IMG/VR virus record: IMGVR_UViG_3300008259_005066 | Location: 124,001 to 188,000 of that record | Reading direction: 5' to 3' (one strand) | Length of the DNA: 64,000 nucleotides | In this document: one piece after another, positions 13,624 to 60,754 of the stretch | Layout: each line of letters opens with the position of its first letter | Position numbering within the stretch: position 1 is the first letter of the stretch | Translations under genes and position numbers: made by a program | The notes under the pieces: generated by a model | The model's database searches: none | Seen by the model: the letters and a program-made list of their open reading frames with translations, nothing else | Told to the model about the DNA's origin: nothing

Positions 13624-13641
13624 CTACGCAGTTTATTGCGA

Positions 13642-45398: not shown

Positions 45399-45820
45399 AT
45401 GCAGTGGGTGTTTGGTTCTATTCCGTATCAACCGATCGTTATCTCTATCTCTTAAGGAATGACGATCGTAACCCCGGAACTTGGGGATTGCCTGGTGGCA
45501 AAGCCCTGGCCAACGAAACCTTGATAGAAACCATACGCAGAGAATGCATTGAAGAACTGGGTTCGTGGCCCCAGGAGATCCGATTGGTGCCTATAGAAAA
45601 ATTCACTAGCCCTGATGGCAAGTTCCATTATCATACGTTTTTCTGTAGCGTTGCAAAAGAATTTGTGCCTGAACTAAACGAAGAACATCAAGGTTATGCC
45701 TGGATTGATTCGCATACTTGGCCTAGGCCGTTGCATCCGGGCCTATGGTCGACAGTGAACTTTGATGAAGTCAAACAAAAAATGACACAGGTGCAACGCC
45801 TGCATCACACATCACAGTAA
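45380..45820 (+). CDS. NUDIX hydrolase
   Basis: Nudix box GGKALANETLIETIRRECIEELG. True start may be TTG 45395. Confidence 0.9.
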   Translation: MESSALNAVGVWFYSVSTDRYLYLLRNDDRNPGTWGLPGGKALANETLIETIRRECIEELGSWPQEIRLVPIEKFTSPDGKFHYHTFFCSVAKEFVPELNEEHQGYAWIDSHTWPRPLHPGLWSTVNFDEVKQKMTQVQRLHHTSQ

Positions 45821-46476: not shown

Positions 46477-47141
46477 AATCTTCCCACCATTATTTCAATG
46501 GTGCCCTCTTCAGTTGACTGATGATTGTCCAGTGCTTTGCCTAATACTACGCCCGGAGTATATTGGGTCACTGGCAAGGCCATGGCCACACCCGGAGTGT
46601 CGCTGGAACACAACAAATCACCTTTGGAAATCTGTCCTTTGACCCGACAAGGGACCCGCCCAATCAGGGCCACTGGTGCTACAAATTCACCTTCCAATCC
46701 GCGATTCATCAGCACGCCAGGATTTTCAGACACAGTGCCGGCGATAGACGACTGGCATGCTTGTGTGCTTTGTGTGACTTCTTGATCTCCGCCTATGACC
46801 AAAACTGTGCCCACAGGATATTCTGCGTCAGCTAGATATCTTTCAGCCACGTCAGCGTATTGTGCTGATGTGGCTTTAACAAATGCAGTATTAAAATATG
46901 CTGTAGCGTTTCCTATGTTACCCACACCGTTACTGCTGGCATTTTCAAAGCCATTGATAAAACTCTTGTTTGACATTGACTGCACAGCGTTAGCACCTAT
47001 CAATTGATAACCACCTGGGTGTGAACCATCATGCACACGGATCACTTCTAAATCAGTGTCAATGCTTAACTCGCCGGCAGAACCAGTGAATGAGTTATTT
47101 TGTGCTGTGGTTCCCCTGCGGAACTGTAAAACGGTTGGCAT
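46473..47141 (-). CDS. small tail/fibre protein: Mtd-N-like head plus Peptidase G2-like chaperone domain
   Basis: QFRRGT...GELSIDTD...HDG; C-terminal AQYADVAE...GRVPC...GKAL. Confidence 0.65.
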   Translation of the reverse strand: MPTVLQFRRGTTAQNNSFTGSAGELSIDTDLEVIRVHDGSHPGGYQLIGANAVQSMSNKSFINGFENASSNGVGNIGNATAYFNTAFVKATSAQYADVAERYLADAEYPVGTVLVIGGDQEVTQSTQACQSSIAGTVSENPGVLMNRGLEGEFVAPVALIGRVPCRVKGQISKGDLLCSSDTPGVAMALPVTQYTPGVVLGKALDNHQSTEEGTIEIMVGRL

Positions 47142-47166
47142 TGAATTCTCCTGTTTCTTTATTTAT

Positions 47167-50100
47167 TTAGGTTAACACACCAAGATCCACACCCTCTAGC
47201 ACTTCGCCCACTGGGTCCATCATGCTGTAAACTTCGCCCAAGTTCACACCAAACGGATCCGTGGCTGATGATTCAAACGGTGCTTCCTGCACAGTCTGGA
47301 CGAAATTGTAGCTGAGGTCAAAATTACCCGTGGAGCCAGGCACCGGTTGCACCGTGGAGTTAGGATACTGGGTAGCACCACCACCTCCACCACCGCCACT
47401 CTGATCTTCCCATGTAAGTCCACCAGCACCATTGGTAGTGAGAACTTGGGCGGCATTGCCATACCCACTAGGAAATATATAGGTAAAATTTCCGGTCAGT
47501 GTAGCCGGTGATCGGAGTCCTATATAGTTGCTGTTGTCACTGTCGTTGAGGAACAGTATACCGCGATTTTGTATTTCAACGTTGGACGACGCTTTGATCA
47601 GAGCGCCAGTGACGTTGCCTGTGGCCACTAATTGTCCTGTGGTAACAAGATTACCACCAGTGATGTTACCCGTGGCGTCAACGCGACCTGCTGTAGTGAT
47701 ATTTCCACCTGACACATTGCCAGTGGCAATTACTTGACTTCCTGTTGTTAAATTACCGCCTGTGACATTGCCTGTCACATCTAAACTTGTAAGTGTGCCT
47801 AGAGATGTGATATTGGGCTGTGCGGCCGTGTTCAACGTTCCTGTGAGCGTGGTTGCAACTATGGTAGAAGCACCTAGATTACCAACGTTGGCGTTACCGG
47901 TGACAGACAACACTCCGGATGTTATGAGGTTGCCGCCTGTGATGTTGCCCGTGGCCACTACCTGTGCACCGGTAGTAAGATTGCCACCAGTGACATTTCC
48001 AGACGCTGTCAAACTGGTCAATGTTCCTAGAGAACTTATATTAGGTTGTGCTGCCGTGGTCAGTGTGCCGGTTATCAGCGTTCCACTTAGGTTGCCGCTG
48101 GTAATGTTTCCAGTGACCCCTAATGATGTTAACGTGCCAACCGAAGTAATGTTGGGTTGTGCCGCTGTTGTTACTGTGCCTGCTGTGGTGGCTGCGCCTG
48201 TCAAGTCACCCACGAATGTGGTCGAGGTCACACTGGTCAGGCCAGCCACGGTGGTCACTGTGGCGCCCAGTGTGAGTGCTGTTGATCCCAGTGTGACAGC
48301 GGCATTGGCCAATCTTGCCTGTGCCAAGGTGCCACTTGAAATATTGTCAGCACTGATACTGGAGACGTTGGCGCCTGATCCATTGAGTGTGCCCACGAAG
48401 TTGCCACTGGTGACATTGCCTGTGACGGCCAAATTTGTGAGTGTGCCAACTGAGGTAATGTTGGTTTGTGCGGCTGTGCTTATGGTTCCTGTCAGTGTAG
48501 TTGCTGTGACTGTGGTAGCTCCAAGATTGCCCACGTTGGCATTGCCAGTGGCAGATATTGTTGCGGATTCAAGCCCACCAACTATGAGATTACCATAGTT
48601 GTTTACTGTGACAACATCATTTGATACTGATACATTGGTGGCTGCTATGAGTTTACCTGCTGAGTTATCATAGCCCATGAAAGCGGCCTGTTCTGTGGTA
48701 GTGTAATACCAAAGTTCCTGGCCTCGATCTTTGCCGTCGTTGCTGGTCAGCGGTGTGTTGTTAGCGCCACGACCTAACCCAATGATTGGATCAACTACGT
48801 TAAGATTGGTGACGTTGACGGAAATAATATTGCCACTCACAGTAAGATTTCCTGCTATTGTGACGTTGTCGCTGGCAGTAAGTGTTCCTGTTGACACTGT
48901 GCCTGTAGTGACCAAATTGCCACCCGAGACATTACCGGTGGCAGTTAAACTTGTCAGTGTACCAACGGATGTAACATTGGGTTGTGCGGCTGTTTCTAGA
49001 GTACCAGTAACAGTAGTGAATGCACCCCGTGTTCCGGAAATATTACCAGAACCCACGTTTCCAGTCACGCTCAACGAATCAAGTGTTCCCACTGATGTGA
49101 TATTTGTTTGTGCGGCAGTGGTCAGCGTGCCAATGATATTGGTACCAATGAGATTACCACCAGTGACGTTGCCTGTTGCTGTGACTTGCCCTGCGGTAAC
49201 GATATTGCCGCCGGTGACGTTGCCAGTGGCTGTGATTGTTGTTCCTGCTGATACCAGCCCTGCAGTAACAAGATTGCCACCTGTGATGTTGCCGGTGGCG
49301 TCAACACGACCTGCTGTGACGAGATTGCCACCTGTGACATTGCCAGTAGCTACTACCAATCCTGCTGTGCCAAGATTGCCCACGTTGGCATTGCCGGTAG
49401 CATTGAGTGTACCGGTGATGTTAGCACCTGTTGTGGTGGCTACAAGCACTATGGAAGAATTTGGAGCCAACGCGATATTGGCAGCAGATGTGGTATTGAT
49501 TTGTAGTGAAGTTCCAGAATCAAAGATGTTACCACTGAGTAAAAGATTGGCACCCGACACATTGCCGGTGATATTGGCATTGCCAGACACGCTTAAAGAA
49601 TTAGCTATAGAAACAATGGCATTGGCCAAAAATGACACAGTGCCGTTACCTGCTACTGGACCAACACTAATGTTAGTTGTAGATCCTGCCGCCCCGAGTG
49701 TTCCAATACTAATGGTCTTGGTTGACCCAGATGCAGTGACTCCGTTGCCAATGGCAATAGTTTGAGTTGCAGTGCTACGGCCAATGGCAATTGCACCAGT
49801 GGCTGAGGTGCCACCAATGGTCAAAGGACCACTGGTCTGGCCGGTCATTATATTGAGTGTGCCACTGGTTATGGTAGTGAATAAACTGGTGGTGCCGGTG
49901 GTAGTTGTAGTTGCCACATTAGGCGTAGACATTGATGTAGCATGGCTGGCTAACGCAACAGTCAAAATATTAGTGCTGGGATTGAAAGTTAGGCCTGTAT
50001 CATCAGCGAATAGTGATCTATAACCACCAGCTGAGCCACTTGGACTTACATAAGGTAAATTGTAGGTTACGTTGTCATCTGGAGATTCTGTAACAAATAT

Positions 50101-51252
50101 AAAGTTTGCGACATTGGCCGTGCCTGCAAGATTTCCAATAAAGTTAGGAGCTGTGATATTGCCAGTGGCATTGATGGTGCCAGTGACATTGGCGCCTGTG
50201 GTTGTTGCGACTACTACGTTTGTTCCATTTGGAGCAAGTGTAACATTACCACTTGATCCAGTGATCAAGAACAATGCACCTGTATCAACAATATTACCAG
50301 ATAGATTTATATTGCCACCGGTTATGTTGCCAGTGGCTGTGATCTGCCCTGCTGTGCCAAGATTGCCCACGTTGGCATTGCCAGAAACGGTAATAGCAGT
50401 TAAGTTAGCATTGGTAGCACCCAGGTTACCAACGTTGGCATTGCCCGTCGCTGACAGCACGCCACTGGTTATAAGGTTACCGCCGGTGATATTGCCCGTG
50501 GCCACAACAGTATTGGCATTGACTTCTGGAGAAGCTCCTGATAATACAGTCGTGCCGCCAGCAGGATTGGTAATGATAACTGCTGTGGCATTGGCAGAGA
50601 TTTGTGCGTTGCCAAGATAGATAGTGGAGTTGGCTAGATAGATATCTTTCCATCGGCTAGTAGTTGTACCTAGATCGTAAGTGACATTGGCCCCAGGTAA
50701 TACGCTACCATAAAAAGTTGGACTGTCATTGACTGCAAATGTTATAGTATCTGTTGTAGCATTGCCTGTGATTACAATGTTATTGCCAGTTGAGAATGTA
50801 ACTGTGTCGCCCACAATGTCTGCCAGTACCGCAGTGCCATTGGCATAGATGTTGCCAAACGCGAATGCAGAGTTCTGTTCAAAGGTCAGTGCAGTGACGC
50901 CAATGGTGATGGGATCGTTTGTGGTCAGTTTCCACTGGGTGTCTTTATAGGTCACACCTTCGGTGACCATGACGATGGTTCCAGCATTGAGTTCGCCGGA
51001 CTCGTTGGTATCTACTGATCTAATCCAAGTGCCATTTGATCCTGTGCCCAACACTGATACCTGATAAACACCGTTTTGGCTACCAGTGGATTGGCCGGCT
51101 ACTAGGATTCTGCTACCTATGCTCAAACTCACACCATCCACTGTGCTGGGCGCACCGCCTGCCAGTGTGACGTCGGTCAGCGTGATCACGCGGACCGCTT
51201 GTTTGTAGTCTATGTCAAATATCTGATAGGCGCGAGGTTTAGTTAATCCCAT
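47167..51252 (-). CDS. giant virion fibre/structural protein with GN(I/V)TGGN repeats (1361 aa)
   Basis: N-terminal KQAVRV...QNGVY...WIRSVD tail-fibre motif; Gly/Asn/Thr repeats; ATAAATA at 51272-51278. Confidence 0.7.
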   Translation of the reverse strand: MGLTKPRAYQIFDIDYKQAVRVITLTDVTLAGGAPSTVDGVSLSIGSRILVAGQSTGSQNGVYQVSVLGTGSNGTWIRSVDTNESGELNAGTIVMVTEGVTYKDTQWKLTTNDPITIGVTALTFEQNSAFAFGNIYANGTAVLADIVGDTVTFSTGNNIVITGNATTDTITFAVNDSPTFYGSVLPGANVTYDLGTTTSRWKDIYLANSTIYLGNAQISANATAVIITNPAGGTTVLSGASPEVNANTVVATGNITGGNLITSGVLSATGNANVGNLGATNANLTAITVSGNANVGNLGTAGQITATGNITGGNINLSGNIVDTGALFLITGSSGNVTLAPNGTNVVVATTTGANVTGTINATGNITAPNFIGNLAGTANVANFIFVTESPDDNVTYNLPYVSPSGSAGGYRSLFADDTGLTFNPSTNILTVALASHATSMSTPNVATTTTTGTTSLFTTITSGTLNIMTGQTSGPLTIGGTSATGAIAIGRSTATQTIAIGNGVTASGSTKTISIGTLGAAGSTTNISVGPVAGNGTVSFLANAIVSIANSLSVSGNANITGNVSGANLLLSGNIFDSGTSLQINTTSAANIALAPNSSIVLVATTTGANITGTLNATGNANVGNLGTAGLVVATGNVTGGNLVTAGRVDATGNITGGNLVTAGLVSAGTTITATGNVTGGNIVTAGQVTATGNVTGGNLIGTNIIGTLTTAAQTNITSVGTLDSLSVTGNVGSGNISGTRGAFTTVTGTLETAAQPNVTSVGTLTSLTATGNVSGGNLVTTGTVSTGTLTASDNVTIAGNLTVSGNIISVNVTNLNVVDPIIGLGRGANNTPLTSNDGKDRGQELWYYTTTEQAAFMGYDNSAGKLIAATNVSVSNDVVTVNNYGNLIVGGLESATISATGNANVGNLGATTVTATTLTGTISTAAQTNITSVGTLTNLAVTGNVTSGNFVGTLNGSGANVSSISADNISSGTLAQARLANAAVTLGSTALTLGATVTTVAGLTSVTSTTFVGDLTGAATTAGTVTTAAQPNITSVGTLTSLGVTGNITSGNLSGTLITGTLTTAAQPNISSLGTLTSLTASGNVTGGNLTTGAQVVATGNITGGNLITSGVLSVTGNANVGNLGASTIVATTLTGTLNTAAQPNITSLGTLTSLDVTGNVTGGNLTTGSQVIATGNVSGGNITTAGRVDATGNITGGNLVTTGQLVATGNVTGALIKASSNVEIQNRGILFLNDSDNSNYIGLRSPATLTGNFTYIFPSGYGNAAQVLTTNGAGGLTWEDQSGGGGGGGATQYPNSTVQPVPGSTGNFDLSYNFVQTVQEAPFESSATDPFGVNLGEVYSMMDPVGEVLEGVDLGVLT

Positions 51253-51280
51253 GTTTTACCCAGGTTTGATATATTTATGG

Positions 51281-51313
51281 AAAAAAATAGGGCCAACCAG
51301 TGGCCCTATTTTT
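51281..51313 (-). terminator. intrinsic terminator
   Basis: 13-bp stem AAAAATAGGGCCA/TGGCCCTATTTTT plus T-run. Confidence 0.85.
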
Positions 51314-51329
51314 GGTAAGTTTGCGCAGA

Positions 51330-54300
51330 TTACAGGCGCCCTACTACGACTTCTATCACACCTTCCGTGCCATCAAAGTCTTCCAGTGCTTTGCCTATCA
51401 CAGTGCCCACACGTGGATCTGGTTCGGCTCTAGCACGACCATCTGCTGTGGATACCATCATGTCGCCTTTGCGCACAGGACCTGTGACCCGGGTTGGTAC
51501 ACGACCTGTGAGTGCTACAGCAACAATGTGATCACCTTCCAGTGCAGAATTCATGATGTAACTTGGATTGGTAGAAATCACACCAGCCACACGCTTGCAT
51601 GCTTCTTCGGTGCAACCTGTGACTTCGGCTGATCCGCCAAAACATACCACTGTGCCGGGTTCTAGATTGGTATCTGCCGCATACATCTCGGCCAAGTCAG
51701 CGTATTGTGCTGAGGTGGCTTTGGCAAATATGGTATTGAAATAACTGCTGGATGTTCCAATGTTGCCTACACCGTTGGCCTGCAGATTGTTGATACCAGC
51801 CGAAGTAAATGACACAATACCAGAACCGCCTACATTGATATTGACATTACCGTTGCTGGTAGCGCAACTCACATTGGACGTTCCATTGGCGATGGTAGTG
51901 GTATCAACGTTATTGGAACTCAGTGTGCCAGGTGTTGTTCCATCCGGTCCAAAGAATGCCAAGGTGTTGCCCGAGGTGTTCTTGAGGACGATGTTGCCCA
52001 GCGTGATCGAGTTACCACTGAAGTAGCCATCTCTCCATCTCAGCGCAGAACTGCCCAAATCATAAGTGACGTTGGCTGTGGGTATCAAATCACCGGTGAT
52101 ACGCACATCGTTGTCGGTGTCAACCACTTCCACGGCAGCATTGCCGTTGACGTTAGAAATACCTTTGACCGTGACCGTGGTAGTGATCTCTCGCACCTCG
52201 ATAGTATCAGACACCAGAGGTGCTTCTGTAAATGTCAGCACATTGCCTGTCACGGAATAGGCCAACACAGGAATCTGTAGCACACCGTTGATCGAAACGA
52301 TACAGGAGTCTGTGGTCTGGCTAGTGCCCAATGTGTATGCTACAGTAGATCCATCTCCGTTGAACACTTCTGAATCGATTACTGTGAACACAGTGCCCGC
52401 AGATACCCACGAGTCTGCATCATAGAATTCCAAACTGTCCAGCGTGGTGTTGAAACGGATCATACCAGTGACGCCAGTGGCCGGACGCTGTGCGGAGTTA
52501 CCGCGTGGTATCAGGATTGAGTTACTGGATTGGAATGAAACTACGGCATTGGCTACCTGTGTGGAGTTACCAAATGACGCTGTAGACGTGCCTGCATCAA
52601 CATAGAATATGTTGGCAGTGGTGTCACTGTTGACCGCAAAGTCTGTGTCAGAGCTGTCACTGTTTACTGTGACGCGACCTGTGCGGCTGGTTATACTGGC
52701 AACATATAAATTGCCGTTGGTGATATCAATGCCTTGTGTAGATGCTACTGCACGCACATTGGCTTCTGCTGTGTTGCCAACAAATATTTTTACGTTGCCG
52801 TTGGTAGAACCCAGCATTAAATTACCACGTGACGTGCTTCCACCTGTTTGTGCGTTGGCCACTACGTATAAGTAACCGTCATTGAGTGAAGAAGTGTCGC
52901 CAAAGAAAGCAGGATCATCATGAGTGCTGGAACCAATACCCATGTCAATGAAAAATGTGGAGTCGGTTCCGTTGTCAGCAGTGGCCACATAGTCTGTAGA
53001 TGCAATGGGGCCAGCGTTGATGTTTTCAAAGTTAATCTGGCTGTATGAATTGGTGTTGCCCGAAAACTGTGCTACTATGTTGGAACCCAGAGGGGTAAAT
53101 CCTGCAACACCTGCTTGTATGGCCAAGTTACCTGTGGGCGCTTGACCAAAGAAAATACCAGAAACATTGGCTACGATATTGCTTGTGGAAGTAAAGGTAC
53201 CAATTACTGTGCCATTGCCGGTTATGTAGAGTTGTTGTGCATTGATATTGCCACTCAACGCATTGAGATTGGCCGAAGTGTTGATATTGCCTGTGGCATC
53301 GATGCGGCCGCCTGTGGATATATTACCGCCTGTGATGTTACCAAGAACGGTCAATGCATCAGTAGTGGCATCATATGTGATTCCTGCATCACCGGCAATT
53401 AAACCGTTGTTGTTGAACAAAATCTGTGTGTTAGAACCTGGCGCTACAAATGGACCAGAAATGTTGCCTACTGATACTACGCTTTCAGCATAGATATTGC
53501 CTGCTTGGAACGTGCCATACTGCACCACATTGACGATGTTGTTTCCGCTGAAGTTTACATTGGCAGCAGCTACAACGTTGCCGGTAGAGTTATCCCAGAA
53601 TACCGAAGCATTACCTTTGCCTGTGGCTGCTTTGTAGTATTCCATGTAGATACCACGATCCATACCATCATCTGAGGTCAACGGTGCTCCATTGGCACCT
53701 GTGCCCATGATGATTATGGGATCTTCTACCCGCAAGTCATCGATGTTGATGTAGGTCAGATTGCCTTGGACCACTAAGTTGCCACCAATAGTAGCGTTGC
53801 CTGTGGTCTCCAGATGAACAGCATACAGAGTGCTGTTAGCAGTGATATTGCCACCAAAAATATTGCCAGTGGCAGAAATGTTTGCTCCGCTGGAAATCAA
53901 ACCGGTTGCCACAACAGCGGCGTTTGATATAAGATTACCACCGGTAATATTGCCAGTTGCGGATACAGTGGTGGCAGCAGATACGGAAGCATTACTTACC
54001 ACATTGCCACCTGTGACATTGCCAGTGGCACTCACAGTGGTTGCCGCTGACACTGCGGCGTTGCTTACTAGGTTACCACCAGTGATGTTACCGGTAGTGT
54101 TTATTTGTCCAGATACACTGAGGTTGCCAAGAGCCAGATTACCAGTAATGGTAACGTTACCAATCACAGCGCCACTGGAAATCAAATTACCAGCAGTGAC
54201 ATTACCTGTGGCATCGATGTTGCCAGTGGTAGAAATGTTACCACCGGATATGTTACCAGTGGTTGTTGAAATATTGCCTGCGGCTATGACAGCCGCATTG

Positions 54301-54875
54301 GAAACCAAGTTACCACCGGTGATGTTACCGGTAGCGGAAATTTGACCCACTGTGGAAAGATTGCCGGCACGCACATTGCCAGTGATGGCTGCATCCGTGA
54401 TAATATTGCCGACCAAACTTGTGGTGCCGTTGATGACGATGTTGCCACCAATGTTGGCGTCATTGGTGTGGAAACTGGCGTAACTAGCGATAGTGACCGT
54501 GGTATTGGTAGTGGTGTCATTGGTGAATACCGTGACAAACTCACCTTGAGATTCATCCCAAACAAAAGCGATGTTTTGGCTGCTGCCACGTTCGCCAATG
54601 AAACCAATGTCCAAACTAGGAGCACCTGATTGATTGGCGGCCAGCAACAGTATGGGATCTTCAATAACAACACTGACTGTGTCAATGGTTGTGGTAGTTC
54701 CGTTGACTGTCAAGTTGCCAGATACTGTAAGATCTGATCCGTAGACCAGACTGTTGGCTATTTTGCCTGCTGTGATTGAGTAATCTTGCAGTTTGACGCC
54801 TGCGTTGATACCAAGGTATACGTTACCGGTTGATGAATCGGTAATCTGATTGTTTTTTATCCGTGTAATGGCCAT
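51330..54875 (-). CDS. giant virion protein with GNITGGN repeats and C-terminal Peptidase G2-like domain (1181 aa)
   Basis: Repeats plus AQYADLAE...GRVP...GKALE; CTAAATA at 54906-54912. Confidence 0.7.
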   Translation of the reverse strand: MAITRIKNNQITDSSTGNVYLGINAGVKLQDYSITAGKIANSLVYGSDLTVSGNLTVNGTTTTIDTVSVVIEDPILLLAANQSGAPSLDIGFIGERGSSQNIAFVWDESQGEFVTVFTNDTTTNTTVTIASYASFHTNDANIGGNIVINGTTSLVGNIITDAAITGNVRAGNLSTVGQISATGNITGGNLVSNAAVIAAGNISTTTGNISGGNISTTGNIDATGNVTAGNLISSGAVIGNVTITGNLALGNLSVSGQINTTGNITGGNLVSNAAVSAATTVSATGNVTGGNVVSNASVSAATTVSATGNITGGNLISNAAVVATGLISSGANISATGNIFGGNITANSTLYAVHLETTGNATIGGNLVVQGNLTYINIDDLRVEDPIIIMGTGANGAPLTSDDGMDRGIYMEYYKAATGKGNASVFWDNSTGNVVAAANVNFSGNNIVNVVQYGTFQAGNIYAESVVSVGNISGPFVAPGSNTQILFNNNGLIAGDAGITYDATTDALTVLGNITGGNISTGGRIDATGNINTSANLNALSGNINAQQLYITGNGTVIGTFTSTSNIVANVSGIFFGQAPTGNLAIQAGVAGFTPLGSNIVAQFSGNTNSYSQINFENINAGPIASTDYVATADNGTDSTFFIDMGIGSSTHDDPAFFGDTSSLNDGYLYVVANAQTGGSTSRGNLMLGSTNGNVKIFVGNTAEANVRAVASTQGIDITNGNLYVASITSRTGRVTVNSDSSDTDFAVNSDTTANIFYVDAGTSTASFGNSTQVANAVVSFQSSNSILIPRGNSAQRPATGVTGMIRFNTTLDSLEFYDADSWVSAGTVFTVIDSEVFNGDGSTVAYTLGTSQTTDSCIVSINGVLQIPVLAYSVTGNVLTFTEAPLVSDTIEVREITTTVTVKGISNVNGNAAVEVVDTDNDVRITGDLIPTANVTYDLGSSALRWRDGYFSGNSITLGNIVLKNTSGNTLAFFGPDGTTPGTLSSNNVDTTTIANGTSNVSCATSNGNVNINVGGSGIVSFTSAGINNLQANGVGNIGTSSSYFNTIFAKATSAQYADLAEMYAADTNLEPGTVVCFGGSAEVTGCTEEACKRVAGVISTNPSYIMNSALEGDHIVAVALTGRVPTRVTGPVRKGDMMVSTADGRARAEPDPRVGTVIGKALEDFDGTEGVIEVVVGRL

Positions 54876-54933
54876 AATATGTCACTTCGCTCCGCTCTAT
54901 GGTATTATTTAGCGGTCCGGCCAAAAAGATCTG

Positions 54934-56262
54934 TTACCAGGCGCCAATCACTATCATAATTTTGTGCGGGCCTGCACCGCACGTTTCCAGTGCTTTGCCC
55001 ACGATCACACCCGGGCGCCAGTCATTATCTGCTAGTTTTTCTGCATGTCCAGCACGGCCTGACGTGGTCAGCACATCGCCTTTGGCCACAGGACCTACCA
55101 CCCAGCAAGGTACACGTCCTGCCATGGCTATGGGCACACCTGCTTGACCTGCGTTCATGATATAGGCAGGATCAGTGGAAATCACACCGGCCAATCGTTG
55201 ATCAGCATACTGGTAACTTTCTGTGACTTCGCTGTCGCCCGCAAAAATCATTACCCACCCGGGCTGATAAGCGCCATCGGCAGCAAAATATTCCGCCAAG
55301 TCCGCATACTGAGCAGATGTTGCTTTGGCAAATATAGTATTGAAATATGTGCCGCTGGAACCAATGTTGCCAACGCCGTTGGCATTGTTGTTGAATATGT
55401 TGCCTACACTTAAATTGCCAGTGCCAACATCTAGCCCGCCGCCGCTGGATATCGTGGCAGGAGTGGTCCCATCTGCGGCAAAGAAACCAATGGCATTGCC
55501 AGTTTGGTTGGTCAGTATCACGTTGCCAAGATAGATCGAATTGCCTGCTAGATATAGATCATTCCATCTCAGAGTGGTGTTGCCCAAATCATAAGTGACG
55601 TTGGCTGTCGGTAACAGATTGCCTGTGATATTGACTTGTGCGGTAGCGTCACTGACATTTACAATAGCATTGCCAGCGGAGTTGCTGATTTCTGTGACCA
55701 CTTGTAACTGGCTTATGAAACGTATTTCAATTTGATCCGCCACCGATGGAGCTTCTGTGAATGTTATGACGTTGCCTGTGACAGAGTAAGCAAAAACAGG
55801 AACTTGGCTCACACCGTTGATGCTGACCAAAATAGAATCAGATGTAGCAGTTTCATTCAAGGCAAATACCGAAGTTGCGCCATCGCCATTGATAATTTGG
55901 CTGGTGATATCTACTAAATCTTGACCTACCACATCCCACTCAGTGCCGTCATAGACTTCGACCAACAATGTATTGGTATTGAATCGCAACGCACCTTGAT
56001 CAGGTGATCCGGGACGCTGTGCAGTATTACCCGTGGGTATGGTCAGCGCAGTGGTACTAGTAATCTGTGTCACACCAGCAGAGGCAGGTATCAGCACTAG
56101 ATTACCTGTTGTGGCTGTTAAAGTAACGTTGGTGTTGGATGTGATTGCTGTGCCGTCAATGGTAAAGTTATCAACTATCAACTGGCCTTGGATATTGGCT
56201 GTGGTTCCATTGAAGGTAAAGTTAGCACTGTCCACTAGATAACTAGTTTCCGCCGGTGACAT
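54934..56262 (-). CDS. C-terminal part of frameshifted giant virion protein (Peptidase G2-like end)
   Basis: Paralogous to the C-terminal ~430 aa of 51330..54875; no SD or promoter at its start. Confidence 0.7.
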   Translation of the reverse strand: MSPAETSYLVDSANFTFNGTTANIQGQLIVDNFTIDGTAITSNTNVTLTATTGNLVLIPASAGVTQITSTTALTIPTGNTAQRPGSPDQGALRFNTNTLLVEVYDGTEWDVVGQDLVDITSQIINGDGATSVFALNETATSDSILVSINGVSQVPVFAYSVTGNVITFTEAPSVADQIEIRFISQLQVVTEISNSAGNAIVNVSDATAQVNITGNLLPTANVTYDLGNTTLRWNDLYLAGNSIYLGNVILTNQTGNAIGFFAADGTTPATISSGGGLDVGTGNLSVGNIFNNNANGVGNIGSSGTYFNTIFAKATSAQYADLAEYFAADGAYQPGWVMIFAGDSEVTESYQYADQRLAGVISTDPAYIMNAGQAGVPIAMAGRVPCWVVGPVAKGDVLTTSGRAGHAEKLADNDWRPGVIVGKALETCGAGPHKIMIVIGAW

Positions 56263-59200
56263 TGCCTGTGGCCGATATGGTAGTTGCTGCCGATACGGCA
56301 GAATTGGAAATTAAATTACCAACACTGACGTTGCCATTGACGTTTGCCTGTCCTGTGGCTGAGATATTGGCCACATACAAATCGGTTATGCTAACATTGC
56401 CAACCACTGCTGAATTGGCAATGAGATAGTTGCCCTGCACGTTGGCTGGCGTGGTTATGTTGCCTGTGCTGGTCAGTGTTCCTAGATTGATGATGTTACC
56501 ACTGGTCACATTGGCCAAGATAGTGATATTACCACCATTGATGTTGCCGGATCCTACAGATAAATTACCTGCTGTGACGTTGGCGACAATGACTGCGCTG
56601 TTGGCTATGTTTAGATCTTGTCCCGATATCAATGCGTTGGATATGACATTGCCACCAGTGATGTTACCAGTGGCAGTGATTGTTGTAGACGCACTGATCG
56701 CGGCATTGGAAACTAAATTACCACCGGTAATGTTACCGGTAGCTGATACAGTAGTAGCAGCCGATACAGCGGCGTTTGATGTCAAGTTACCACCGGTAAC
56801 ATTACCGGTAACATTGACGTATCCGGTGGCTGAGATATTTCCTACATCTAGATCTGTGATCGTGACATTGCCAATCACGGCTGAATTAGCAATGAGATAG
56901 TTGCCTTGCACATTGGCAGGAGTGGTGATGTTACCGGTACTGTCTATTGTTCCAAGATTAACGATGTTACCACTGTTTACATTGACTGTTACAGTGATAT
57001 TTCCAGTTGAAATATTTCCAGAACCAGTAGAAACATTACCTGCTGTGACGTTGGCAGTAATGACAGCACTGTTAGCGATAGAAAGATCTTGACCAGTGAT
57101 CAATGCGTTGGCTATGACATTGCCACCAGTGATGTTTCCTGTGGCAGAAATTTGGCCTGCTGTGGCTAGATTACCGCTGACTGTGTTGCCAACAATCAGC
57201 GCAGATTCTCCGTAGAGATTACCAATTTGCCAAGTTCCAAATTGATTGACAGTCACTATCTCGTTGGCGATGGTCACATCTTTGGCTGCCAGGAGATTTC
57301 CTGCGGAATTATCGTAACCTATGAAAGCAGATTTCTCAGAAGTTGAATAATACCACAGTTGCTCGCCGCGATCCTTGCCATCATTGGTAGTCAATGGAGT
57401 GTTGTTGGCTCCACGACCCATGGAAATGATTGGGTCCTCAATGTTGAGGCTGGTCACATTGTTGTAGACTAAATCGCCATTGACAGTGAGATTGCCATCT
57501 ATGATAGCATCGCCGTTGACTTGTAGATTGCCTTGGGCAGTGATGTCATCGCCAGTGATTGACCCAGTCACAGTGAGCGTGTCTGTTTGGATGTTACCAC
57601 CGGTGCCATATCCTACCTGGAAGATATTGGTTGCTTGGTCATAGGTTAAATTAGCGGATGCGCCAAAATCACTGTTGAGGTTGTATTGTATCTGGGTATT
57701 GGACCCAGCGGGCTGTTGGAAATCAACAGGAGCACCATTGGCATAATAGTATCCATCAGTGAGTATGTTGCCCACTGCGGCATTGCCGGTGATCGTGAGT
57801 GTGATTCCACTGATAGAACCGTTGGATATGATATTGCCACCCGTGATGTTACCAGTGGCAGTGACAGTGGTAGCGGCCGATATGGCAGCATTGGATATGA
57901 CATTGCCACCCGTGATATTACCAGTGGCCGATATAGTGGTTGTGGCTGATATGGCAGCATTTGAAGTCACATTGCCACCGGTGATATTGCCAGTGGCAGA
58001 AATTGTAGTCACAGCAGATATGGCAGCGTTTGACACTAAATTACCACCTGTGATATTGCCAGTGGCACTCACAGTGGTAGCGGCACTGATAGCGGCATTT
58101 GATGTCAAGTTACCACCGGTGATGTTACCAGTGGCCGATATAGTGGTTGTGGCTGATATGGCAGCATTGGATATCACATTGCCACCCCATACATTACCCG
58201 TGGCTGCCACAAATCCTTGAGTGCTGAGATTACCGACTATCGCTGTTTCGGTGGCTGTGAGAGTCGCGGTATAGACACCAAGATTGGCATTTAGATTGGC
58301 GGCCGTGATATTGCCATTGACTGTGAGGCTGTTGCCTACAGCATTACCAATGTTGGGTGTGACCAAATTGGCCCCGGGCTTGACTGATATATTGCCCGAT
58401 CCGTCAAAGGCCGTGGTGTCGTTGTCCACCTTGGCAGCGAACACAGTGCCATTGAGCACCAAACCTGCGGCTGTGTTGGCCGAGTAGACTTGGCTGGCAC
58501 TAAACTGTGTGAATTCAATGTTAGCATAGCCAATGATAAATGGACCTGGAGGTGCTGTTTTTACATAACTTTCTCCGGCTCCGGTGTTACCTGCCTGAAC
58601 ATAGAAATAGGAACCTTGGTCCAGACCAGTGGAAGTATCTGGTTCGTATGTATCCGTATCGCTAGAACGTGTGAGTATCCATGGCGCAGACACATTACCA
58701 GTCTGGCTGACCACATACACACCATTTTCATAGGCCAAGGCTTGCTGATAAACCAACACACGCTGACCCACTGTGGGATTGACACCATCCACGGTGAGTT
58801 GAGCATTGACATTGGCAGTGAGCGTGGCTCCTATACCAGAATTCACTGTCACACCTTGTGTGAGACCAGCCGCCGATGTGATGTTGGCCACTGGTACACC
58901 ATTGTAAATGGTAGTGAGCACGGCCGCTGATGCATTGGGAGTAGATACTACAAAATAAGCAGTGTTGCCTGCGATGCCAGAAAAAGAATTTGCAAACCAC
59001 AGTTGATCATTGATCTGCAGATTGGCCGCTGAAGAAAACACTACCACGTTACCTGCTATGGTATCTGTCACTGTGAAAGTGTTGCCGCCTTGGGTATAAG
59101 TTGCGGCGGGCAATGCTACCGGAGTCTCAACATAGACTGGAGTGTGGATATGGATTCCCGATGACACCGCATCGTCAACATATTGTTTGGTAGCGGCATC

Positions 59201-59980
59201 ATAGGACTGTTGTGGATTGGACAGCCCATTGATCCACTGTGAGTTCATCACTATGTTGCCAGTGCCGTCCCATTGTAGCACACCGCTGGCAGAATTCAGC
59301 GTGAGATCACCAGAACTGGTTGTGACAGTGTTGGTTACAATGTTGGGTGCTGTCACATTGCCAATGGCCACTATGTTGCCAGAAGAATACAAGTTGCCAC
59401 CATTGATATTGCCAGTGGCCGTGATTGTTGTGGCCGCTGAAATAGCGGCGTTGGATATGACATTGCCACCCGTGATATTACCAGTGGCAGTGACAGTGGT
59501 AGCGGCCGATATGGCAGCATTGGACACGATGTTGCCACCTGTGACATTGCCACCCACTGTGACTGTGTTTGAAATGTTTACGATATTGCCAGTGAAATAC
59601 TCCTGCACCACCAGATTGGCCACTACCAGGTTGCCAGATATGCTGACATTACCTATCACAGCGCCGGTGGATATCAAGTTACCAGCAGTTAAATTCGCAG
59701 TGACGGCTACATTGGTGCCATCATAGGTAAATCCAGAATTAGTTAGAGCTAACTGTGTAGACCCAGCATAAAATACGCCATTGGCCGTGGCCGAAGTGAT
59801 GCGAACATTTGACGCATTGGCCACACCCAAAACTGTGAAATCATCCGCAGGTGTGCTGGTTAGCACGCCAACACGATTGTTGTCTACATCAAAGTAGATC
59901 AGGTTGCCCTGGATGCTGAGATTGGCACCACGTTGCAGGTTGTCCTGCAATATATTGCCGGAAATGCGAGATATTGCCAT
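56243..59980 (-). CDS. N-terminal part of frameshifted giant virion protein (1245 aa)
   Basis: MAISRISG start, AATKQYVD motif, repeats; ends abruptly at a repeat (GNVTGGN-TAG). Confidence 0.75.
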   Translation of the reverse strand: MAISRISGNILQDNLQRGANLSIQGNLIYFDVDNNRVGVLTSTPADDFTVLGVANASNVRITSATANGVFYAGSTQLALTNSGFTYDGTNVAVTANLTAGNLISTGAVIGNVSISGNLVVANLVVQEYFTGNIVNISNTVTVGGNVTGGNIVSNAAISAATTVTATGNITGGNVISNAAISAATTITATGNINGGNLYSSGNIVAIGNVTAPNIVTNTVTTSSGDLTLNSASGVLQWDGTGNIVMNSQWINGLSNPQQSYDAATKQYVDDAVSSGIHIHTPVYVETPVALPAATYTQGGNTFTVTDTIAGNVVVFSSAANLQINDQLWFANSFSGIAGNTAYFVVSTPNASAAVLTTIYNGVPVANITSAAGLTQGVTVNSGIGATLTANVNAQLTVDGVNPTVGQRVLVYQQALAYENGVYVVSQTGNVSAPWILTRSSDTDTYEPDTSTGLDQGSYFYVQAGNTGAGESYVKTAPPGPFIIGYANIEFTQFSASQVYSANTAAGLVLNGTVFAAKVDNDTTAFDGSGNISVKPGANLVTPNIGNAVGNSLTVNGNITAANLNANLGVYTATLTATETAIVGNLSTQGFVAATGNVWGGNVISNAAISATTTISATGNITGGNLTSNAAISAATTVSATGNITGGNLVSNAAISAVTTISATGNITGGNVTSNAAISATTTISATGNITGGNVISNAAISAATTVTATGNITGGNIISNGSISGITLTITGNAAVGNILTDGYYYANGAPVDFQQPAGSNTQIQYNLNSDFGASANLTYDQATNIFQVGYGTGGNIQTDTLTVTGSITGDDITAQGNLQVNGDAIIDGNLTVNGDLVYNNVTSLNIEDPIISMGRGANNTPLTTNDGKDRGEQLWYYSTSEKSAFIGYDNSAGNLLAAKDVTIANEIVTVNQFGTWQIGNLYGESALIVGNTVSGNLATAGQISATGNITGGNVIANALITGQDLSIANSAVITANVTAGNVSTGSGNISTGNITVTVNVNSGNIVNLGTIDSTGNITTPANVQGNYLIANSAVIGNVTITDLDVGNISATGYVNVTGNVTGGNLTSNAAVSAATTVSATGNITGGNLVSNAAISASTTITATGNITGGNVISNALISGQDLNIANSAVIVANVTAGNLSVGSGNINGGNITILANVTSGNIINLGTLTSTGNITTPANVQGNYLIANSAVVGNVSITDLYVANISATGQANVNGNVSVGNLISNSAVSAATTISATGNVTGGN
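57827..58171 (-). repeat. coding tandem repeat, 5 x 69 bp (23 aa)
   Basis: Unit SNAAISA(T/A/V)TT(I/V)(S/T)ATGNITGGN(L/V/I)x; near-identical copies also around 59400-59530. Confidence 0.9.
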
Positions 59981-60007
59981 CGATAGCCCTTTTTACTATT
60001 TATGGGC

Positions 60008-60430
60008 TTATGGTTGTGTGGGCGCGACCACGCTCCTGATGACGTTTATGGGCTCGCCATCGGGCGGAGCCGAAGTAAAAGTTATGTCGTAACCACCGCC
60101 CGTGATTGAGTATGTGGTACCAGGTTGCTGATACACAGAACCTATGAACACAATGACTTGATCATCTGCAGAAATTGCTGTGGTATTGGTGAGGCTAAAA
60201 GTCAAGGTAGAGCCATCGCCGGTGTCGCTGTAGACATCTACATTGAGTTCTCCGCCTATGCCCACAGGGCGAAATACAGAACCGTTGAAAAATTCCAGCG
60301 TGCCTATGTCTGTGTTATAACGGAAACTGCCAAAAACCGGTGCTGTGGGACGTGTGCTGGAATCGCCAGCAGGAACCACTATGCTGGAACTACCGCTTTG
60401 CAGTTGACGATTTTTGACAAAGTAACCCAT
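60008..60430 (-). CDS. hypothetical virion protein
   Basis: RYNTDIGTLEFFNG and GDGSTLTF...VFIGSVYQ modules shared with the giant proteins. Confidence 0.65.
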   Translation of the reverse strand: MGYFVKNRQLQSGSSSIVVPAGDSSTRPTAPVFGSFRYNTDIGTLEFFNGSVFRPVGIGGELNVDVYSDTGDGSTLTFSLTNTTAISADDQVIVFIGSVYQQPGTTYSITGGGYDITFTSAPPDGEPINVIRSVVAPTQP

Positions 60431-60744
60431 TAGATAGTGGTGAAACTTGCGACTGTGGTGATAGCATTGTTGGCATTGGCATCGGCCCGCACTGTATCGC
60501 CTGGTCCCAACAGCAGTTTTTCACTGCCCGCATACAATTGATAGGTATCGTTGGCAGTGATCAACAGTTGGCTCAATATGGTGTTGCTGTTGCCGGCTGA
60601 GCTACCGCTGGGCACCACATACACATTGGCAACCACGTTGCCAGCTGAGTAGTTTGTGAAACTCAAAAATGTGATAGCCGTGTTGCCCGAACTGGTGTAG
60701 ATATTACCGGCTGCTGTTGTTACGTTTCCTACTGCTATAGTCAT
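60430..60744 (-). CDS. hypothetical virion protein
   Basis: 104-aa beta-rich ORF with SD AAGGA. Confidence 0.65.
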   Translation of the reverse strand: MTIAVGNVTTAAGNIYTSSGNTAITFLSFTNYSAGNVVANVYVVPSGSSAGNSNTILSQLLITANDTYQLYAGSEKLLLGPGDTVRADANANNAITTVASFTTI

Positions 60745-60754
60745 GATCTGTTCC

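What the first reader, a model, noticed from the sequence alone, without database searches (positions are those of the whole stretch)
47167..59980. Giant virion proteins packed with N-x-T/S sequons, flanked by GT42/MptE-like genes: possible glycosylation substrate
Seen: three proteins of ~1180-1680 aa built from GN(I/V)TGGN, GNIS and ANVT repeats. Each 23-aa unit at 57827-58171 carries an N-I-T; the overall density is high but was not counted. The module is bracketed by two paralogous Rossmann ORFs (45805..46476, 61384..61971), and the latter has the GNG-x-S/CN/SG/GxD layout of CstII-type sialyltransferases. Known: cytoplasmic N-glycosyltransferases (HMW1C/ApNGT) glycosylate N-x-S/T in adhesins. 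Inference: these fibres may be the acceptor for the glycan cluster, giving a glycosylated phage coat.
Basis: inference. Interest (0 to 1): 0.65.

Follow-up and report, generated by a model that had tools for sequence, protein, structure and literature searches.

The report
Jumbo-phage tail fibres beside sialyltransferase-like genes
These are the giant tail-fibre genes of an uncultured freshwater jumbo phage; their many N-x-S/T motifs are a by-product of a repeated structural unit, not evidence of N-glycosylation. A sialyltransferase/Maf-like gene and a degenerate copy of it do sit conserved on either side of the fibres, so O-linked glycosylation stays possible but untested.

Summary
Window 45805-61971 (minus strand) is the fibre module of a PA5oct-related jumbo myovirus. 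It has four fibre genes: 1245+442 aa, 1181 aa, 1361 aa and 222 aa. The first pair is one 1709-aa gene, broken in this contig alone by an 83-nt deletion. The fibres carry 162 N-x-S/T in 4229 aa (3.83 per 100 aa, against 0.81 in 20 other window proteins).

The excess over shuffles is only 1.54-fold, and the mirror motif [ST]-x-N is enriched equally (1.48-fold). G-N (3.3-fold) and N-[ILV] (2.3-fold) are far stronger. In 32 orthologues the +2 Ser/Thr is less conserved than other Ser/Thr (0.54 vs 0.71). So the conserved unit is the repeat T-G-N-[IV]-T-G-G-N, not the sequon.

The 209-kb contig has no GT41 (HMW1C/NGT) gene.

The flanking gene 61384-61971 does have a GT42/Maf/MptE fold (Maf Z 12.9, CstII Z 10.3) and keeps the GNGxS, CN, SSG and GxD motifs. 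Gene 45805-46476 is a true paralogue (hhalign 99.2%) that has lost all four. Both keep their positions in diverged relatives.

Known enzymes of this fold O-glycosylate Ser/Thr or extend glycans; none is known to modify Asn. N-glycosylation is therefore unsupported, and O-glycosylation of the fibres is a speculative lead.

The parts
61384..61971 (-). P0006, 195 aa: enzyme with a GT42/Maf/MptE fold. GNGxS, CN, SSG and GxD motifs are invariant across homologues.
   Evidence: AF2 pLDDT 89.7. Foldseek top hit Maf 5mu5 at E 6.7e-5, then CstII/Cst-I. VIA Z: Maf 12.9, CstII 10.3, Cst-I 10.2, MptE HPPK 9.8. Family profile against PDB finds GT42 enzymes at E 0.007-0.04. phrog_30607 1e-33 and phrog_4603 'alpha-2,3-sialyltransferase' 1.3e-5. 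PF01973 only 13.1 bits.
60755..61387 (-). 210-aa ORF of unknown function; position conserved in relatives (208-209 aa).
   Evidence: No Pfam or PHROG hit. Synteny in L002 and L005.
60430..60744 (-). 104-aa ORF of unknown function; position conserved.
   Evidence: No PHROG hit. Synteny.
60008..60430 (-). 140-aa ORF with weak similarity to segments of fibre and baseplate-wedge proteins; position conserved.
   Evidence: phrog_2885 3.3e-7 and phrog_18673 1.7e-5. Synteny.
56243..59980 (-). Fibre 1, N-terminal 1245 aa as it reads in this contig. Repeat-rich, with 16 GN..GGN-type motifs.
   Evidence: FapA beta-solenoid match at 21.9 bits. Single ORF in relatives.
57822..58187 (-). Tandem array: 69 nt (23 aa) x5.3. 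Five of the units carry G-N-I-T-G-G-N.
56245..56246 (.). Site of an 83-nt deletion, specific to this contig, that breaks fibre 1.
   Evidence: L039, a 99.7-100% identical contig, has 83 extra nt here and an intact 1709-aa ORF. Contigs of four public freshwater/lake runs all carry 83 letters at this site.
54934..56262 (-). Fibre 1, C-terminal 442 aa, including the shared C-terminal domain.
   Evidence: 63% identical to residues 1200-1662 of the 1662-aa orthologue. Aligned in A4.
51330..54875 (-). Fibre 2, 1181 aa: N-terminal adaptor-like part, beta-solenoid-like repeats, shared C-terminal domain.
   Evidence: PF03961 at 28.5 bits. More than 4000 homologues, many with a precomputed PF03906 T7-tail-fibre hit. 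C-terminus 47% identical to MS-verified PA5oct gp359. Weak PF11962 IMC match, E 0.0014.
47167..51252 (-). Fibre 3, 1361 aa, with 17-aa and roughly 40-aa repeat units. Highest sequon density (61).
   Evidence: phrog_30390 on the N-terminus. Orthologue of 1226 aa in L005.
46473..47141 (-). Short fibre, 222 aa: Mtd_N domain plus the shared C-terminal domain.
   Evidence: PF18454 1.9e-10. Aligned in A4.
45805..46476 (-). P0005, 223 aa: degenerate paralogue of P0006 that lacks GNGxS, CN, SSG and GxD. Its start overlaps the stop of the short fibre gene.
   Evidence: hhalign 99.2%. Alignment A3. In 16 of 25 homologous loci the ORF directly upstream carries the exact SAQYAD string of the shared C-terminal fibre domain. 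Atlas lead to MptE-like, score 0.89.

Best explanation
The region is the adsorption-fibre module of an uncultured freshwater jumbo myovirus whose closest cultured relative is Pseudomonas phage PA5oct. It encodes three giant fibres and one short fibre. The giant fibres are long runs of short beta-strands joined by Gly-Asn corners, with the repeat unit (A/S)-T-G-N-[IV]-T-G-G-N at periods of 17 and 23 aa. The Asn residues are conserved as part of the G-N corner of this beta-solenoid-type repeat. The Thr two residues later belongs to the same repeat, so the high N-x-S/T count is a by-product of fold and composition, not a set of selected glycosylation sites. Three of the fibres end in a shared domain of about 150 aa, possibly an intramolecular-chaperone-type folding domain.

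The module is bracketed by a small enzyme with the CstII/Maf/MptE fold and intact nucleotide-sugar motifs, and by a paralogue that has lost those motifs and is translationally coupled to the last fibre gene. Their acceptor is not established.

Shown: gene models, repeats, sequon counts and controls, folds, paralogy, synteny. Inferred: the structural role of Asn, the trimeric beta-helical nature of the fibres, and any enzymatic activity.
For: Phage identity: TerL, sheath, UvsX and gp32 are in the window. TerL is 52% identical to PA5oct. The contig is an IMG/VR record of 209.5 kb, about 60% complete.

Fibre identity: the C-terminal domain is shared with PA5oct gp359, an MS-verified virion protein next to the long-tail-fibre gene. 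Orthologues carry precomputed T7-tail-fibre N-terminal hits. There is a sub-threshold FapA beta-solenoid match. The weak Foldseek hits are all to phage fibre or tailspike N-terminal domains.

Sequons as a by-product:
- N-x-[ST] 1.54-fold over shuffles against [ST]-x-N 1.48-fold; G-N 3.28-fold (z 19.8); N-[ILV] 2.33-fold (z 16.5). With the 40 core motifs masked, 116 observed against 88.6 expected.
- In the core motif the +2 residue is T in 30, S in 3, and N, G, R, F, W or V in 7.
- In 32 orthologues Ser/Thr at +2 is conserved 0.54 against 0.71 for other Ser/Thr (p 0.004). Sequon Asn is conserved 0.71 against 0.76 for other Asn. Several invariant Asn (172, 208, 213, 343, 422) have a variable +2 residue.
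- Invariant G-N pairs run through alignment A2.
- In the low-confidence model the Asn of T-G-N sits in the turn just before a strand in 15 of 28 G-N sites.

No N-glycosyltransferase: PF13844 gives no match.

Flanking genes. Synteny.
Against: The full-length model of fibre 2 is poor (mean pLDDT 50.2). Side-chain orientation of the Asn was not measured, and the tools return no coordinates. The FapA, T7-tail and Peptidase_G2 matches are all below Pfam cut-offs. Alignment of repeats between orthologues is ambiguous, which could lower the apparent conservation of +2 residues. The contig is only about 60% complete and the host is unknown, so an N-glycosyltransferase encoded elsewhere in the phage or by the host is not excluded. 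A residual 1.3-fold sequon excess remains after the core motif is masked.
Confidence: 0.75

Rival explanations
1. O-glycosylation of the fibres. P0006 acts like a minimal Maf-type glycosyltransferase and transfers a CMP-activated ulosonic acid (host CMP-Kdo or a nonulosonic acid) onto Ser/Thr hydroxyls of the Ser/Thr-rich fibres, or of another virion protein, in the cytoplasm before assembly. The motif-less paralogue P0005 may help recognise the acceptor. The sequons are irrelevant; the 18-26% Ser+Thr content is what matters.
For: The best structural match of P0006 is the flagellin O-glycosyltransferase Maf (Z 12.9, 172 residues aligned; Foldseek E 6.7e-5). The nucleotide-sugar motifs are invariant in 37 homologues. 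A giant fibre-like ORF starts within 2.5 kb downstream of the P0006 homologue in 43 of 49 loci, and within about 50 nt in 15 of them. P0005 homologues follow a fibre gene carrying the exact SAQYAD string of the shared C-terminal domain in 16 of 25 loci. Fibres are 18-26% Ser+Thr. Maf enzymes O-glycosylate surface Ser/Thr and can use CMP-Neu5Ac or CMP-Kdo (PMC11339370; bioRxiv 10.1101/2020.06.03.131540). Virion glycosylation is known in mycobacteriophages (Freeman 2023, cited in PMC12619734).
Against: All linkage comes from one clade (52-100% identity), so inherited gene order explains it equally well. Pelagiphage homologues of P0006 lie among 2OG-Fe(II) oxygenases and replication genes, not beside fibres. 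P0006 is 195 aa and lacks the substrate-binding N- and C-terminal domains of Maf (632 residues in 5mu5). PF01973 scores only 13.1 bits. No NeuB or CMP-ulosonic-acid synthetase is present in the contig. The family has no invariant His matching the CstII catalytic base. There are no experimental data.
Confidence: 0.2
2. One reading: cytoplasmic N-glycosylation of the N-x-S/T sequons by an HMW1C/ApNGT-type enzyme, with the flanking GT-like genes and the upstream sugar cluster extending the glycan.
For: High sequon density (3.83 per 100 aa) and a 1.54-fold excess over shuffles. Source annotations call homologues 'filamentous hemagglutinin', the class of adhesin that HMW1C modifies. A phage sugar cluster exists at 1310-17119 with a GT, a nucleotidyltransferase and a TylF-type O-methyltransferase.
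Against: No GT41 match in the contig. The mirror motif is equally enriched. The +2 Ser/Thr is less conserved than background Ser/Thr. Fibre genes next to P0006 homologues in relatives range from 1.3 to 5.1 sequons per 100 aa and from 0 to 34 core motifs, so the gene linkage does not track sequon content. The GT42/Maf fold is not known to modify Asn.
Confidence: 0.04
3. P0006 and P0005 do not act on virion proteins. P0006 either modifies a glycan, as CstII does on lipooligosaccharide (for example altering the host surface late in infection to prevent superinfection or trapping of progeny), or is an MptE-like pyrophosphokinase acting on a small molecule. Its position beside the fibres is inherited gene order.
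For: CstII/Cst-I (Z about 10) and MptE HPPK (Z 9.8) score close behind Maf. Sequence-level profile hits are to lipooligosaccharide sialyltransferases. Pelagiphage homologues sit in auxiliary-gene neighbourhoods. The size (195 aa) is nearer to MptE (chain 215 residues) than to Maf.
Against: Placement inside the late structural module is conserved and tight, and the paralogue is translationally coupled to a fibre gene. HPPK aligns over only 132 residues and lacks the C-terminal part.
Confidence: 0.3

Closest known systems
Tail-fibre module of Pseudomonas jumbo phage PA5oct (Arenbergviridae), including gp359 and the long-tail-fibre protein gp358
   Same: TerL is 52% identical. The C-terminal ~112 aa of fibre 2 are 47% identical to the C-terminus of gp359, an MS-verified virion protein next to the long-tail-fibre gene and a giant virion protein of about 3850 aa.
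   Different: No match outside the C-terminal domain. tblastn found no P0006 homologue in PA5oct; only pelagiphages matched. The repeat architecture is not shared at detectable level.
Maf flagellin O-glycosyltransferase (Magnetospirillum magneticum, PDB 5mu5)
   Same: Best structural match of P0006: Z 12.9, rmsd 4.2, 172 residues, covering the MptE-like catalytic core at chain residues 272-518.
   Different: Maf has 632 residues with flanking domains, whereas P0006 is the 195-aa core only. 16% identity. PF01973 is far below cut-off. The acceptor would be a phage fibre rather than flagellin, and this is untested.
GT42 sialyltransferases CstII / Cst-I (Campylobacter jejuni) and PmST (Pasteurella multocida)
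   Same: Same fold (Z 10.3 and 10.2; Foldseek E 3e-4). The two motif blocks GNGxS...CN and SSG...GxD align.
   Different: 14-18% identity. No invariant His in the family to match the CstII catalytic base. No Pfam CST-I hit. Shorter by about 60-100 residues. Donor and acceptor unknown.
HMW1 adhesin with HMW1C/ApNGT (GT41) cytoplasmic N-glycosylation
   Same: A long beta-helical adhesin-like protein rich in N-x-S/T. Assembly is cytoplasmic, so only a cytoplasmic transferase could act on it.
   Different: No GT41 gene found. Sequons are not conserved as units. The neighbouring GT-like genes belong to an unrelated fold.
Mycobacteriophage virion glycosylation (Freeman et al. 2023, as cited in PMC12619734)
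   Same: Phage-encoded glycosyltransferase genes placed in the structural module next to the virion genes they modify.
   Different: There the acceptors are the C-termini of capsid and tail-tube subunits and the enzymes belong to other GT families. Glycosylation there was shown by MS; here nothing has been shown.

Membership tests
GT42 (CstII-type sialyltransferase) | Fold similar to CstII/Cst-I | tested here: met
   P0006 model (pLDDT 89.7) against 1ro7_A: Z 10.3, 168 residues; against 2p2v: Z 10.2. Foldseek E 3.4e-4.
GT42 (CstII-type sialyltransferase) | Nucleotide-sugar binding motifs GNGxS, CN, SSG and GxD | tested here: met
   G8 N9 G10 S12, C30 N31, S86 S87 G88 and G107 D109 are invariant in 37 homologues. 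They align to the same blocks of CstII, Cst-I and PmST. Not met by the paralogue P0005.
GT42 (CstII-type sialyltransferase) | Catalytic His (His188 in CstII; recalled from the literature) | tested here: not met
   Alignment A1 has no invariant or nearly invariant His column. Residue-level structural equivalence was not available.
GT42 (CstII-type sialyltransferase) | Significant match to a curated family model | tested here: not met
   No Pfam family at E <= 0.01. Only phrog_4603 at 1.3e-5 over 43 residues.
GT42 (CstII-type sialyltransferase) | Use of a CMP-activated sialic or ulosonic acid donor | not testable with these tools
   Needs biochemistry. The contig has no NeuB or CTP_transf_3 match.
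Maf / MptE-like (PF01973) | MptE-like catalytic core fold | tested here: met
   5mu5: Z 12.9, 172 residues. MptE HPPK 8sd5: Z 9.8.
Maf / MptE-like (PF01973) | Pfam PF01973 above the gathering score | tested here: not met
   13.1 bits against a cut-off of 34.6, E 0.009.
Maf / MptE-like (PF01973) | N- and C-terminal domains flanking the core, as in Maf | tested here: not met
   P0006 is 195 aa and the whole model aligns to the core at chain residues 272-518 of a 632-residue protein.
HMW1C/ApNGT N-glycosylation system (GT41) | A GT41 enzyme encoded with the substrate | tested here: not met
   PF13844 gives no candidate in the 209.5-kb contig; the control genomes did match. The contig is about 60% complete and the host is unknown.
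HMW1C/ApNGT N-glycosylation system (GT41) | Sequons maintained as units (Asn together with +2 Ser/Thr) | tested here: not met
   Ser/Thr at +2 conserved 0.54 against 0.71 for other Ser/Thr. 11 of 40 sequons are kept in at least 75% of orthologues. The mirror motif is equally enriched.
PglB-type oligosaccharyltransferase substrates | Extended sequon D/E-x-N-x-S/T and periplasmic exposure | tested here: not met
   3 of 162 sequons have the extended form. Phage fibres assemble in the cytoplasm (established knowledge).
Beta-solenoid repeat (FapA-type, PF03961) | Pfam match above cut-off, or a confident solenoid model | tested here: inconclusive
   28.5 bits against 31 (fibre 2) and 21.9 bits (fibre 1). 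In the model the repeat region is short strands at pLDDT about 45-74.
Phage fibre with C-terminal intramolecular chaperone (Peptidase_G2 IMC, PF11962) | Pfam match above cut-off | tested here: inconclusive
   18.5 bits against 25, E 0.0014, on the last 156 aa of fibre 2. A profile of 12 C-terminal domains finds no PDB relative.
Phage tail fibre (virion component) | Homology to a protein shown to be in virions | tested here: met
   47% identity over about 112 aa to PA5oct gp359, annotated 'virion structural protein, ESI-MS/MS'.

The most novel reading that the evidence does not exclude
A minimal Maf/CstII-fold enzyme (P0006), helped by a catalytically degenerate paralogue (P0005) coupled to the fibre genes, decorates Ser/Thr of the beta-solenoid tail fibres of a widespread clade of freshwater jumbo phages (about 340 kb) with a sialic-acid-like or Kdo sugar. 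This would be the first glycosylated tail fibre of this kind and a stripped-down protein O-sialyltransferase.
Probability: 0.15. Interest if true: 0.7.

Novelty: new member of a known kind. Interest (0 to 1): 0.32.

Why it matters
The practical lesson is that a high N-x-S/T count in Asn/Thr/Gly-rich beta-helical fibres should not be read as a glycosylation signal. Mirror-motif and orthologue-conservation controls remove it here. What remains of interest is a virus-only family of 195-aa GT42/Maf-fold proteins (2740 homologues found) and its motif-less paralogue, fixed on either side of the fibre genes in an abundant uncultured freshwater jumbo-phage clade. If they glycosylate fibres, that would extend virion glycosylation beyond mycobacteriophages and bear on host recognition and particle stability. 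If they do not, they are an uncharacterised late-gene enzyme pair worth a simple biochemical test.

Tried and rejected
- Near-identity DNA search of 45000-62000 against GenBank phages found no match.
- Sequence searches of PDB with fibres 2 and 3, P0005, P0006, the 23-aa repeat segment and a profile of the C-terminal domain gave nothing meaningful.
- The full-length AF2 model of fibre 2, built with 33 orthologues, was poor (pLDDT 50.2, pTM 0.30). Its Foldseek search gave no hit at E <= 0.001.
- Complex prediction of the short fibre with P0005 returned 'no answer' (score 0.00). This is neither for nor against binding.
- The search for NeuB, CTP_transf_3 and GT41 in the contig found none. The contig is incomplete. 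The complete 343-kb relative could not be searched because its record is not held.
- Literature search found no paper on MptE-like or GT42-like phage proteins, or on glycosylated tail fibres. The 'moraphage' jumbo lineage (PMC12619734) is described there as distinct from T4-like phages, so it is probably not this clade; this was not checked by sequence.
- The Atlas fold search for P0006 returned only its own virus-only clusters.
- I considered whether the 1245 + 442 aa split is a programmed frameshift or two genes. I rejected this because four public assemblies and a near-identical contig all have 83 extra nucleotides and one ORF.

Full report
**Context.** The window is bases 124001-188000 of a single 209,518-bp IMG/VR viral contig. 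The contig is linear, and CheckV estimates it at about 60% complete. The window carries a large terminase, tail sheath, tube, UvsX-like RecA and a gp32-like protein, so this is a T4-superfamily myovirus. Its TerL is closest, at 52% identity, to Pseudomonas jumbo phage PA5oct, followed by Sinorhizobium phage Phosso. Relatives sit on metagenomic contigs of 335-345 kb. Public runs that hold the sequence are freshwater and lake-water metagenomes.

**Gene models.** All genes of the module are on the minus strand. In transcription order they are:
- 61384-61971 (P0006, 195 aa)
- 60755-61387 (210 aa)
- 60430-60744 (104 aa)
- 60008-60430 (140 aa)
- 56243-59980 (1245 aa)
- 54934-56262 (442 aa)
- 51330-54875 (1181 aa)
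- 47167-51252 (1361 aa)
- 46473-47141 (222 aa, Mtd_N domain)
- 45805-46476 (P0005, 223 aa)

These are followed by a convergent NUDIX gene and a gp15-like gene. The same order is found in a 343.6-kb relative and in a 35.8-kb contig: gp23, three small ORFs, the P0006 orthologue, three small ORFs, then fibres of 1534/1662, 1187/1177, 1226 and 405 aa, then the P0005 orthologue.

**The split first fibre.** The 1245-aa and 442-aa ORFs overlap by 20 nt in different frames. The 442-aa product is 63% identical to the C-terminal 460 residues of the 1662-aa orthologue, and the match begins right at the junction. A 99.7-100% identical contig from another sample (L039) has 83 additional nucleotides between window positions 56245 and 56246, and an intact 1709-aa ORF. 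Contigs from four public runs belonging to four studies all show '83 letters between' at that site. The frameshift is therefore specific to this contig, either an assembly artefact or a rare deletion between short ATAGT repeats.

**Repeats and sequons.** TRF finds a 69-nt (23-aa) array x5.3 at 57822-58187, a second of x2.3 at 59394-59552, and a 51-nt (17-aa) array at 49259-49401. The motif G-N-x-x-[GSA]-G-N occurs 40 times. Position 3 is I or V in 39 of them. The +2 position is T in 30, S in 3, and N, N, G, R, F, W or V in 7. Five consecutive 23-aa units inside 57827-58171 each carry N-I-T.

The fibres hold 162 N-x-S/T (x not P) in 4229 aa, or 3.83 per 100 aa. Twenty other window proteins have 0.81 per 100 aa. 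The fibres are 8-13% Asn and 18-26% Ser+Thr, so composition alone predicts 105 +/- 8. The observed excess is 1.54-fold (z 6.8).

Three controls show that this excess is not specific to the sequon:
- The mirror pattern [ST]-x-N occurs 159 times (1.48-fold, z 6.2). G-N is 3.28-fold (z 19.8) and N-[ILV] is 2.33-fold (z 16.5).
- Masking the 40 core motifs leaves 116 sequons against 88.6 expected.
- In an alignment of fibre 2 with 32 orthologues (53-69% identity), Ser/Thr at +2 of the 40 sequons is conserved 0.54 on average, against 0.71 for the other 219 Ser/Thr (Mann-Whitney p 0.004). Sequon Asn is conserved 0.71 against 0.76 for other Asn (not significant). 11 sequons are retained in at least 75% of orthologues. 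Several invariant Asn have a freely varying +2 residue.

The invariant columns of that alignment are dominated by G-N pairs. The conserved element is therefore the G-N-[IV] corner of a repeat, not the Asn-x-Ser/Thr unit. Repeat alignments are ambiguous, so the third control is supportive rather than decisive.

**Fold of the repeats.** Pfam gives only sub-threshold matches to the FapA beta-solenoid domain: 28.5 bits against a cut-off of 31 for fibre 2, and 21.9 and 19.1 bits for fibre 1. An AF2 monomer model of fibre 2 built with 33 sequences is poor (pLDDT 50.2). Its repeat region is a series of 3-8-residue strands at pLDDT 45-74, in which the Asn of T-G-N falls in the turn just before a strand at 15 of 28 G-N sites. 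Gly and Asn at beta-arc corners, and Asn ladders, are typical of beta-solenoids (established knowledge). That the Asn is structural here is an inference, not a measurement.

**Evidence that these are virion fibres.**
- The last ~150 aa of fibre 1, fibre 2 and the short fibre form one conserved domain (alignment A4, 65% mean column identity).
- This domain is 47% identical to the C-terminus of PA5oct gp359. That protein is annotated as a virion structural protein detected by ESI-MS/MS, next to the long-tail-fibre distal subunit.
- The domain gives a weak match to the Peptidase_G2 intramolecular-chaperone domain (18.5 bits against 25) and has no PDB relative by sequence.
- Many orthologues carry precomputed T7-tail-fibre N-terminal hits.
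- The weak Foldseek hits of the poor model are all to N-terminal domains of phage fibres and tailspikes.

**The flanking genes.**
- P0006 belongs to a family of 2740 detected homologues, virus-only in the Atlas. Its AF2 model is confident (pLDDT 89.7).
- Foldseek ranks the Maf flagellin glycosyltransferase first (5mu5, E 6.7e-5), followed by PmST, CstII and Cst-I.
- VIA-align gives Maf Z 12.9 (172 residues), CstII 10.3, Cst-I 10.2 and the archaeal MptE kinase 9.8.
- A profile of the family finds only GT42 sialyltransferases in PDB (E 0.007-0.04), with the GNGxS...CN and SSG...GxD blocks aligned. These residues are invariant in 37 homologues.
- Two things are missing. PF01973 scores 13.1 bits against a cut-off of 34.6. 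No His is conserved to match the CstII catalytic base.
- The loop 111-136 is highly conserved yet has low pLDDT (67-81 per 10-residue block). This resembles a substrate lid, which is an inference.
- P0005 is a genuine paralogue (hhalign probability 99.2%, E 1.9e-19 over 160 columns). Its family has replaced all four motifs and has its own invariant block, AAFDGHQEVF. It is probably not an active transferase of the same kind.

**Linkage.** In 43 of 49 viral contigs with enough downstream sequence, a giant ORF (or one running off the contig) starts within 2.5 kb downstream of the P0006 homologue, and in 15 of them within about 50 nt. Those ORFs range from 1.3 to 5.1 sequons per 100 aa and from 0 to 34 core motifs, so the linkage does not depend on sequon content. 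In 16 of 25 loci with a P0005 homologue (34-49% identity), the ORF directly upstream contains the exact SAQYAD string of the shared C-terminal fibre domain, usually with a 4-nt overlap. All of these loci belong to one clade, so inherited gene order is an adequate explanation. In the only cultured phages with P0006 homologues (pelagiphages HTVC008M and Mosig), the gene lies among 2OG-Fe(II) oxygenases and replication genes, not next to fibres.

**Glycosylation hypotheses.**
- N-linked: the contig has no GT41 match. Only 3 of 162 sequons have the D/E-x-N-x-S/T form. Phage fibres assemble in the cytoplasm, out of reach of periplasmic oligosaccharyltransferases. The neighbouring enzymes have a fold not known to act on Asn.
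- O-linked: Maf enzymes glycosylate surface Ser/Thr of flagellin with nonulosonic acids, and at least one accepts CMP-Neu5Ac and CMP-Kdo (PMC11339370; bioRxiv 10.1101/2020.06.03.131540). A Maf-like action on Ser/Thr-rich fibres is therefore mechanistically coherent.
- Against the O-linked idea: P0006 lacks Maf's flanking domains; no NeuB or CMP-ulosonic-acid synthetase is present in the contig; and nothing experimental exists.
- A phage sugar-modification cluster does exist 30-45 kb away in the window. It has two radical-SAM enzymes, a glycosyltransferase (phrog_1962), a nucleotidyltransferase-cupin fusion, a TylF-type O-methyltransferase, further methyltransferases and a 2OG-Fe(II) oxygenase. 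Its acceptor is unknown and nothing ties it to the fibres.
- A complex prediction of the short fibre with P0005 gave no verdict.

**Verdict.** The sequon enrichment is explained by the repeat unit and by composition. N-glycosylation of the fibres is not supported. The GT42/Maf-like identity of one flanking gene, the paralogy of the other and their conserved placement are confirmed. Fibre O-glycosylation remains a low-probability but testable idea. The fibres themselves are ordinary members of the giant-fibre class of jumbo phages. Operator limits on the reads tool were respected, and no genetic code other than table 11 was used.

Noticed in passing
window 56245-56246 (fibre 1): An 83-nt deletion relative to a 99.7-100% identical contig (L039) and to contigs of four public freshwater or lake runs splits a 1709-aa fibre gene into 1245-aa and 442-aa ORFs. 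The missing segment is bounded by short ATAGT repeats. It is either an assembly artefact or a rare truncated-fibre variant.
   Followed up: yes
window 34384-37646, minus strand: The tail sheath gene also appears split. A 151-aa ORF (37191-37646) matches positions 2-144 of the sheath profile phrog_10581, and a 952-aa ORF (34384-37242) matches positions 238-913, with a 52-nt overlap. This may be a second frameshift in the contig.
   Followed up: partly
window 1310-17119, minus strand: A sugar or small-molecule modification cluster next to UvsX and gp32. It has two radical-SAM enzymes, a glycosyltransferase (4383-5141, phrog_1962), a cytidylyl/adenylyl-transferase fused to a mannose-6-P-isomerase-type cupin (9366-10133), a TylF-type O-methyltransferase (12217-12876), other methyltransferases and a 2OG-Fe(II) oxygenase. 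The acceptor is unknown.
   Followed up: partly
window 46473-47141 and 45805-46476: The short fibre combines an Mtd_N (major tropism determinant N-terminal) domain with the shared C-terminal fibre domain. Its stop overlaps the start of the motif-less GT paralogue. This coupling recurs in diverged relatives.
   Followed up: partly
P0006, residues 111-136 (window about 61564-61641): This loop contains many invariant residues (F117, N118, N119, T124, F126, Y127, P134, T135; Y121 nearly invariant) but has the lowest pLDDT of the model. It is reminiscent of the flexible lid of CstII. Inference only.
   Followed up: no
L003 (Pelagibacter phage HTVC008M, 4180-4983) and L004 (phage Mosig, 9001-9846): The only cultured-phage homologues of P0006 are longer (267-281 aa). 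They sit among 2OG-Fe(II) oxygenases, a carbamoyltransferase and the gp32/gp59 genes, not beside fibres.
   Followed up: partly
window 45380-45820, plus strand: A NUDIX hydrolase gene converges on the end of the fibre module. Its position is conserved in the 343-kb relative.
   Followed up: no
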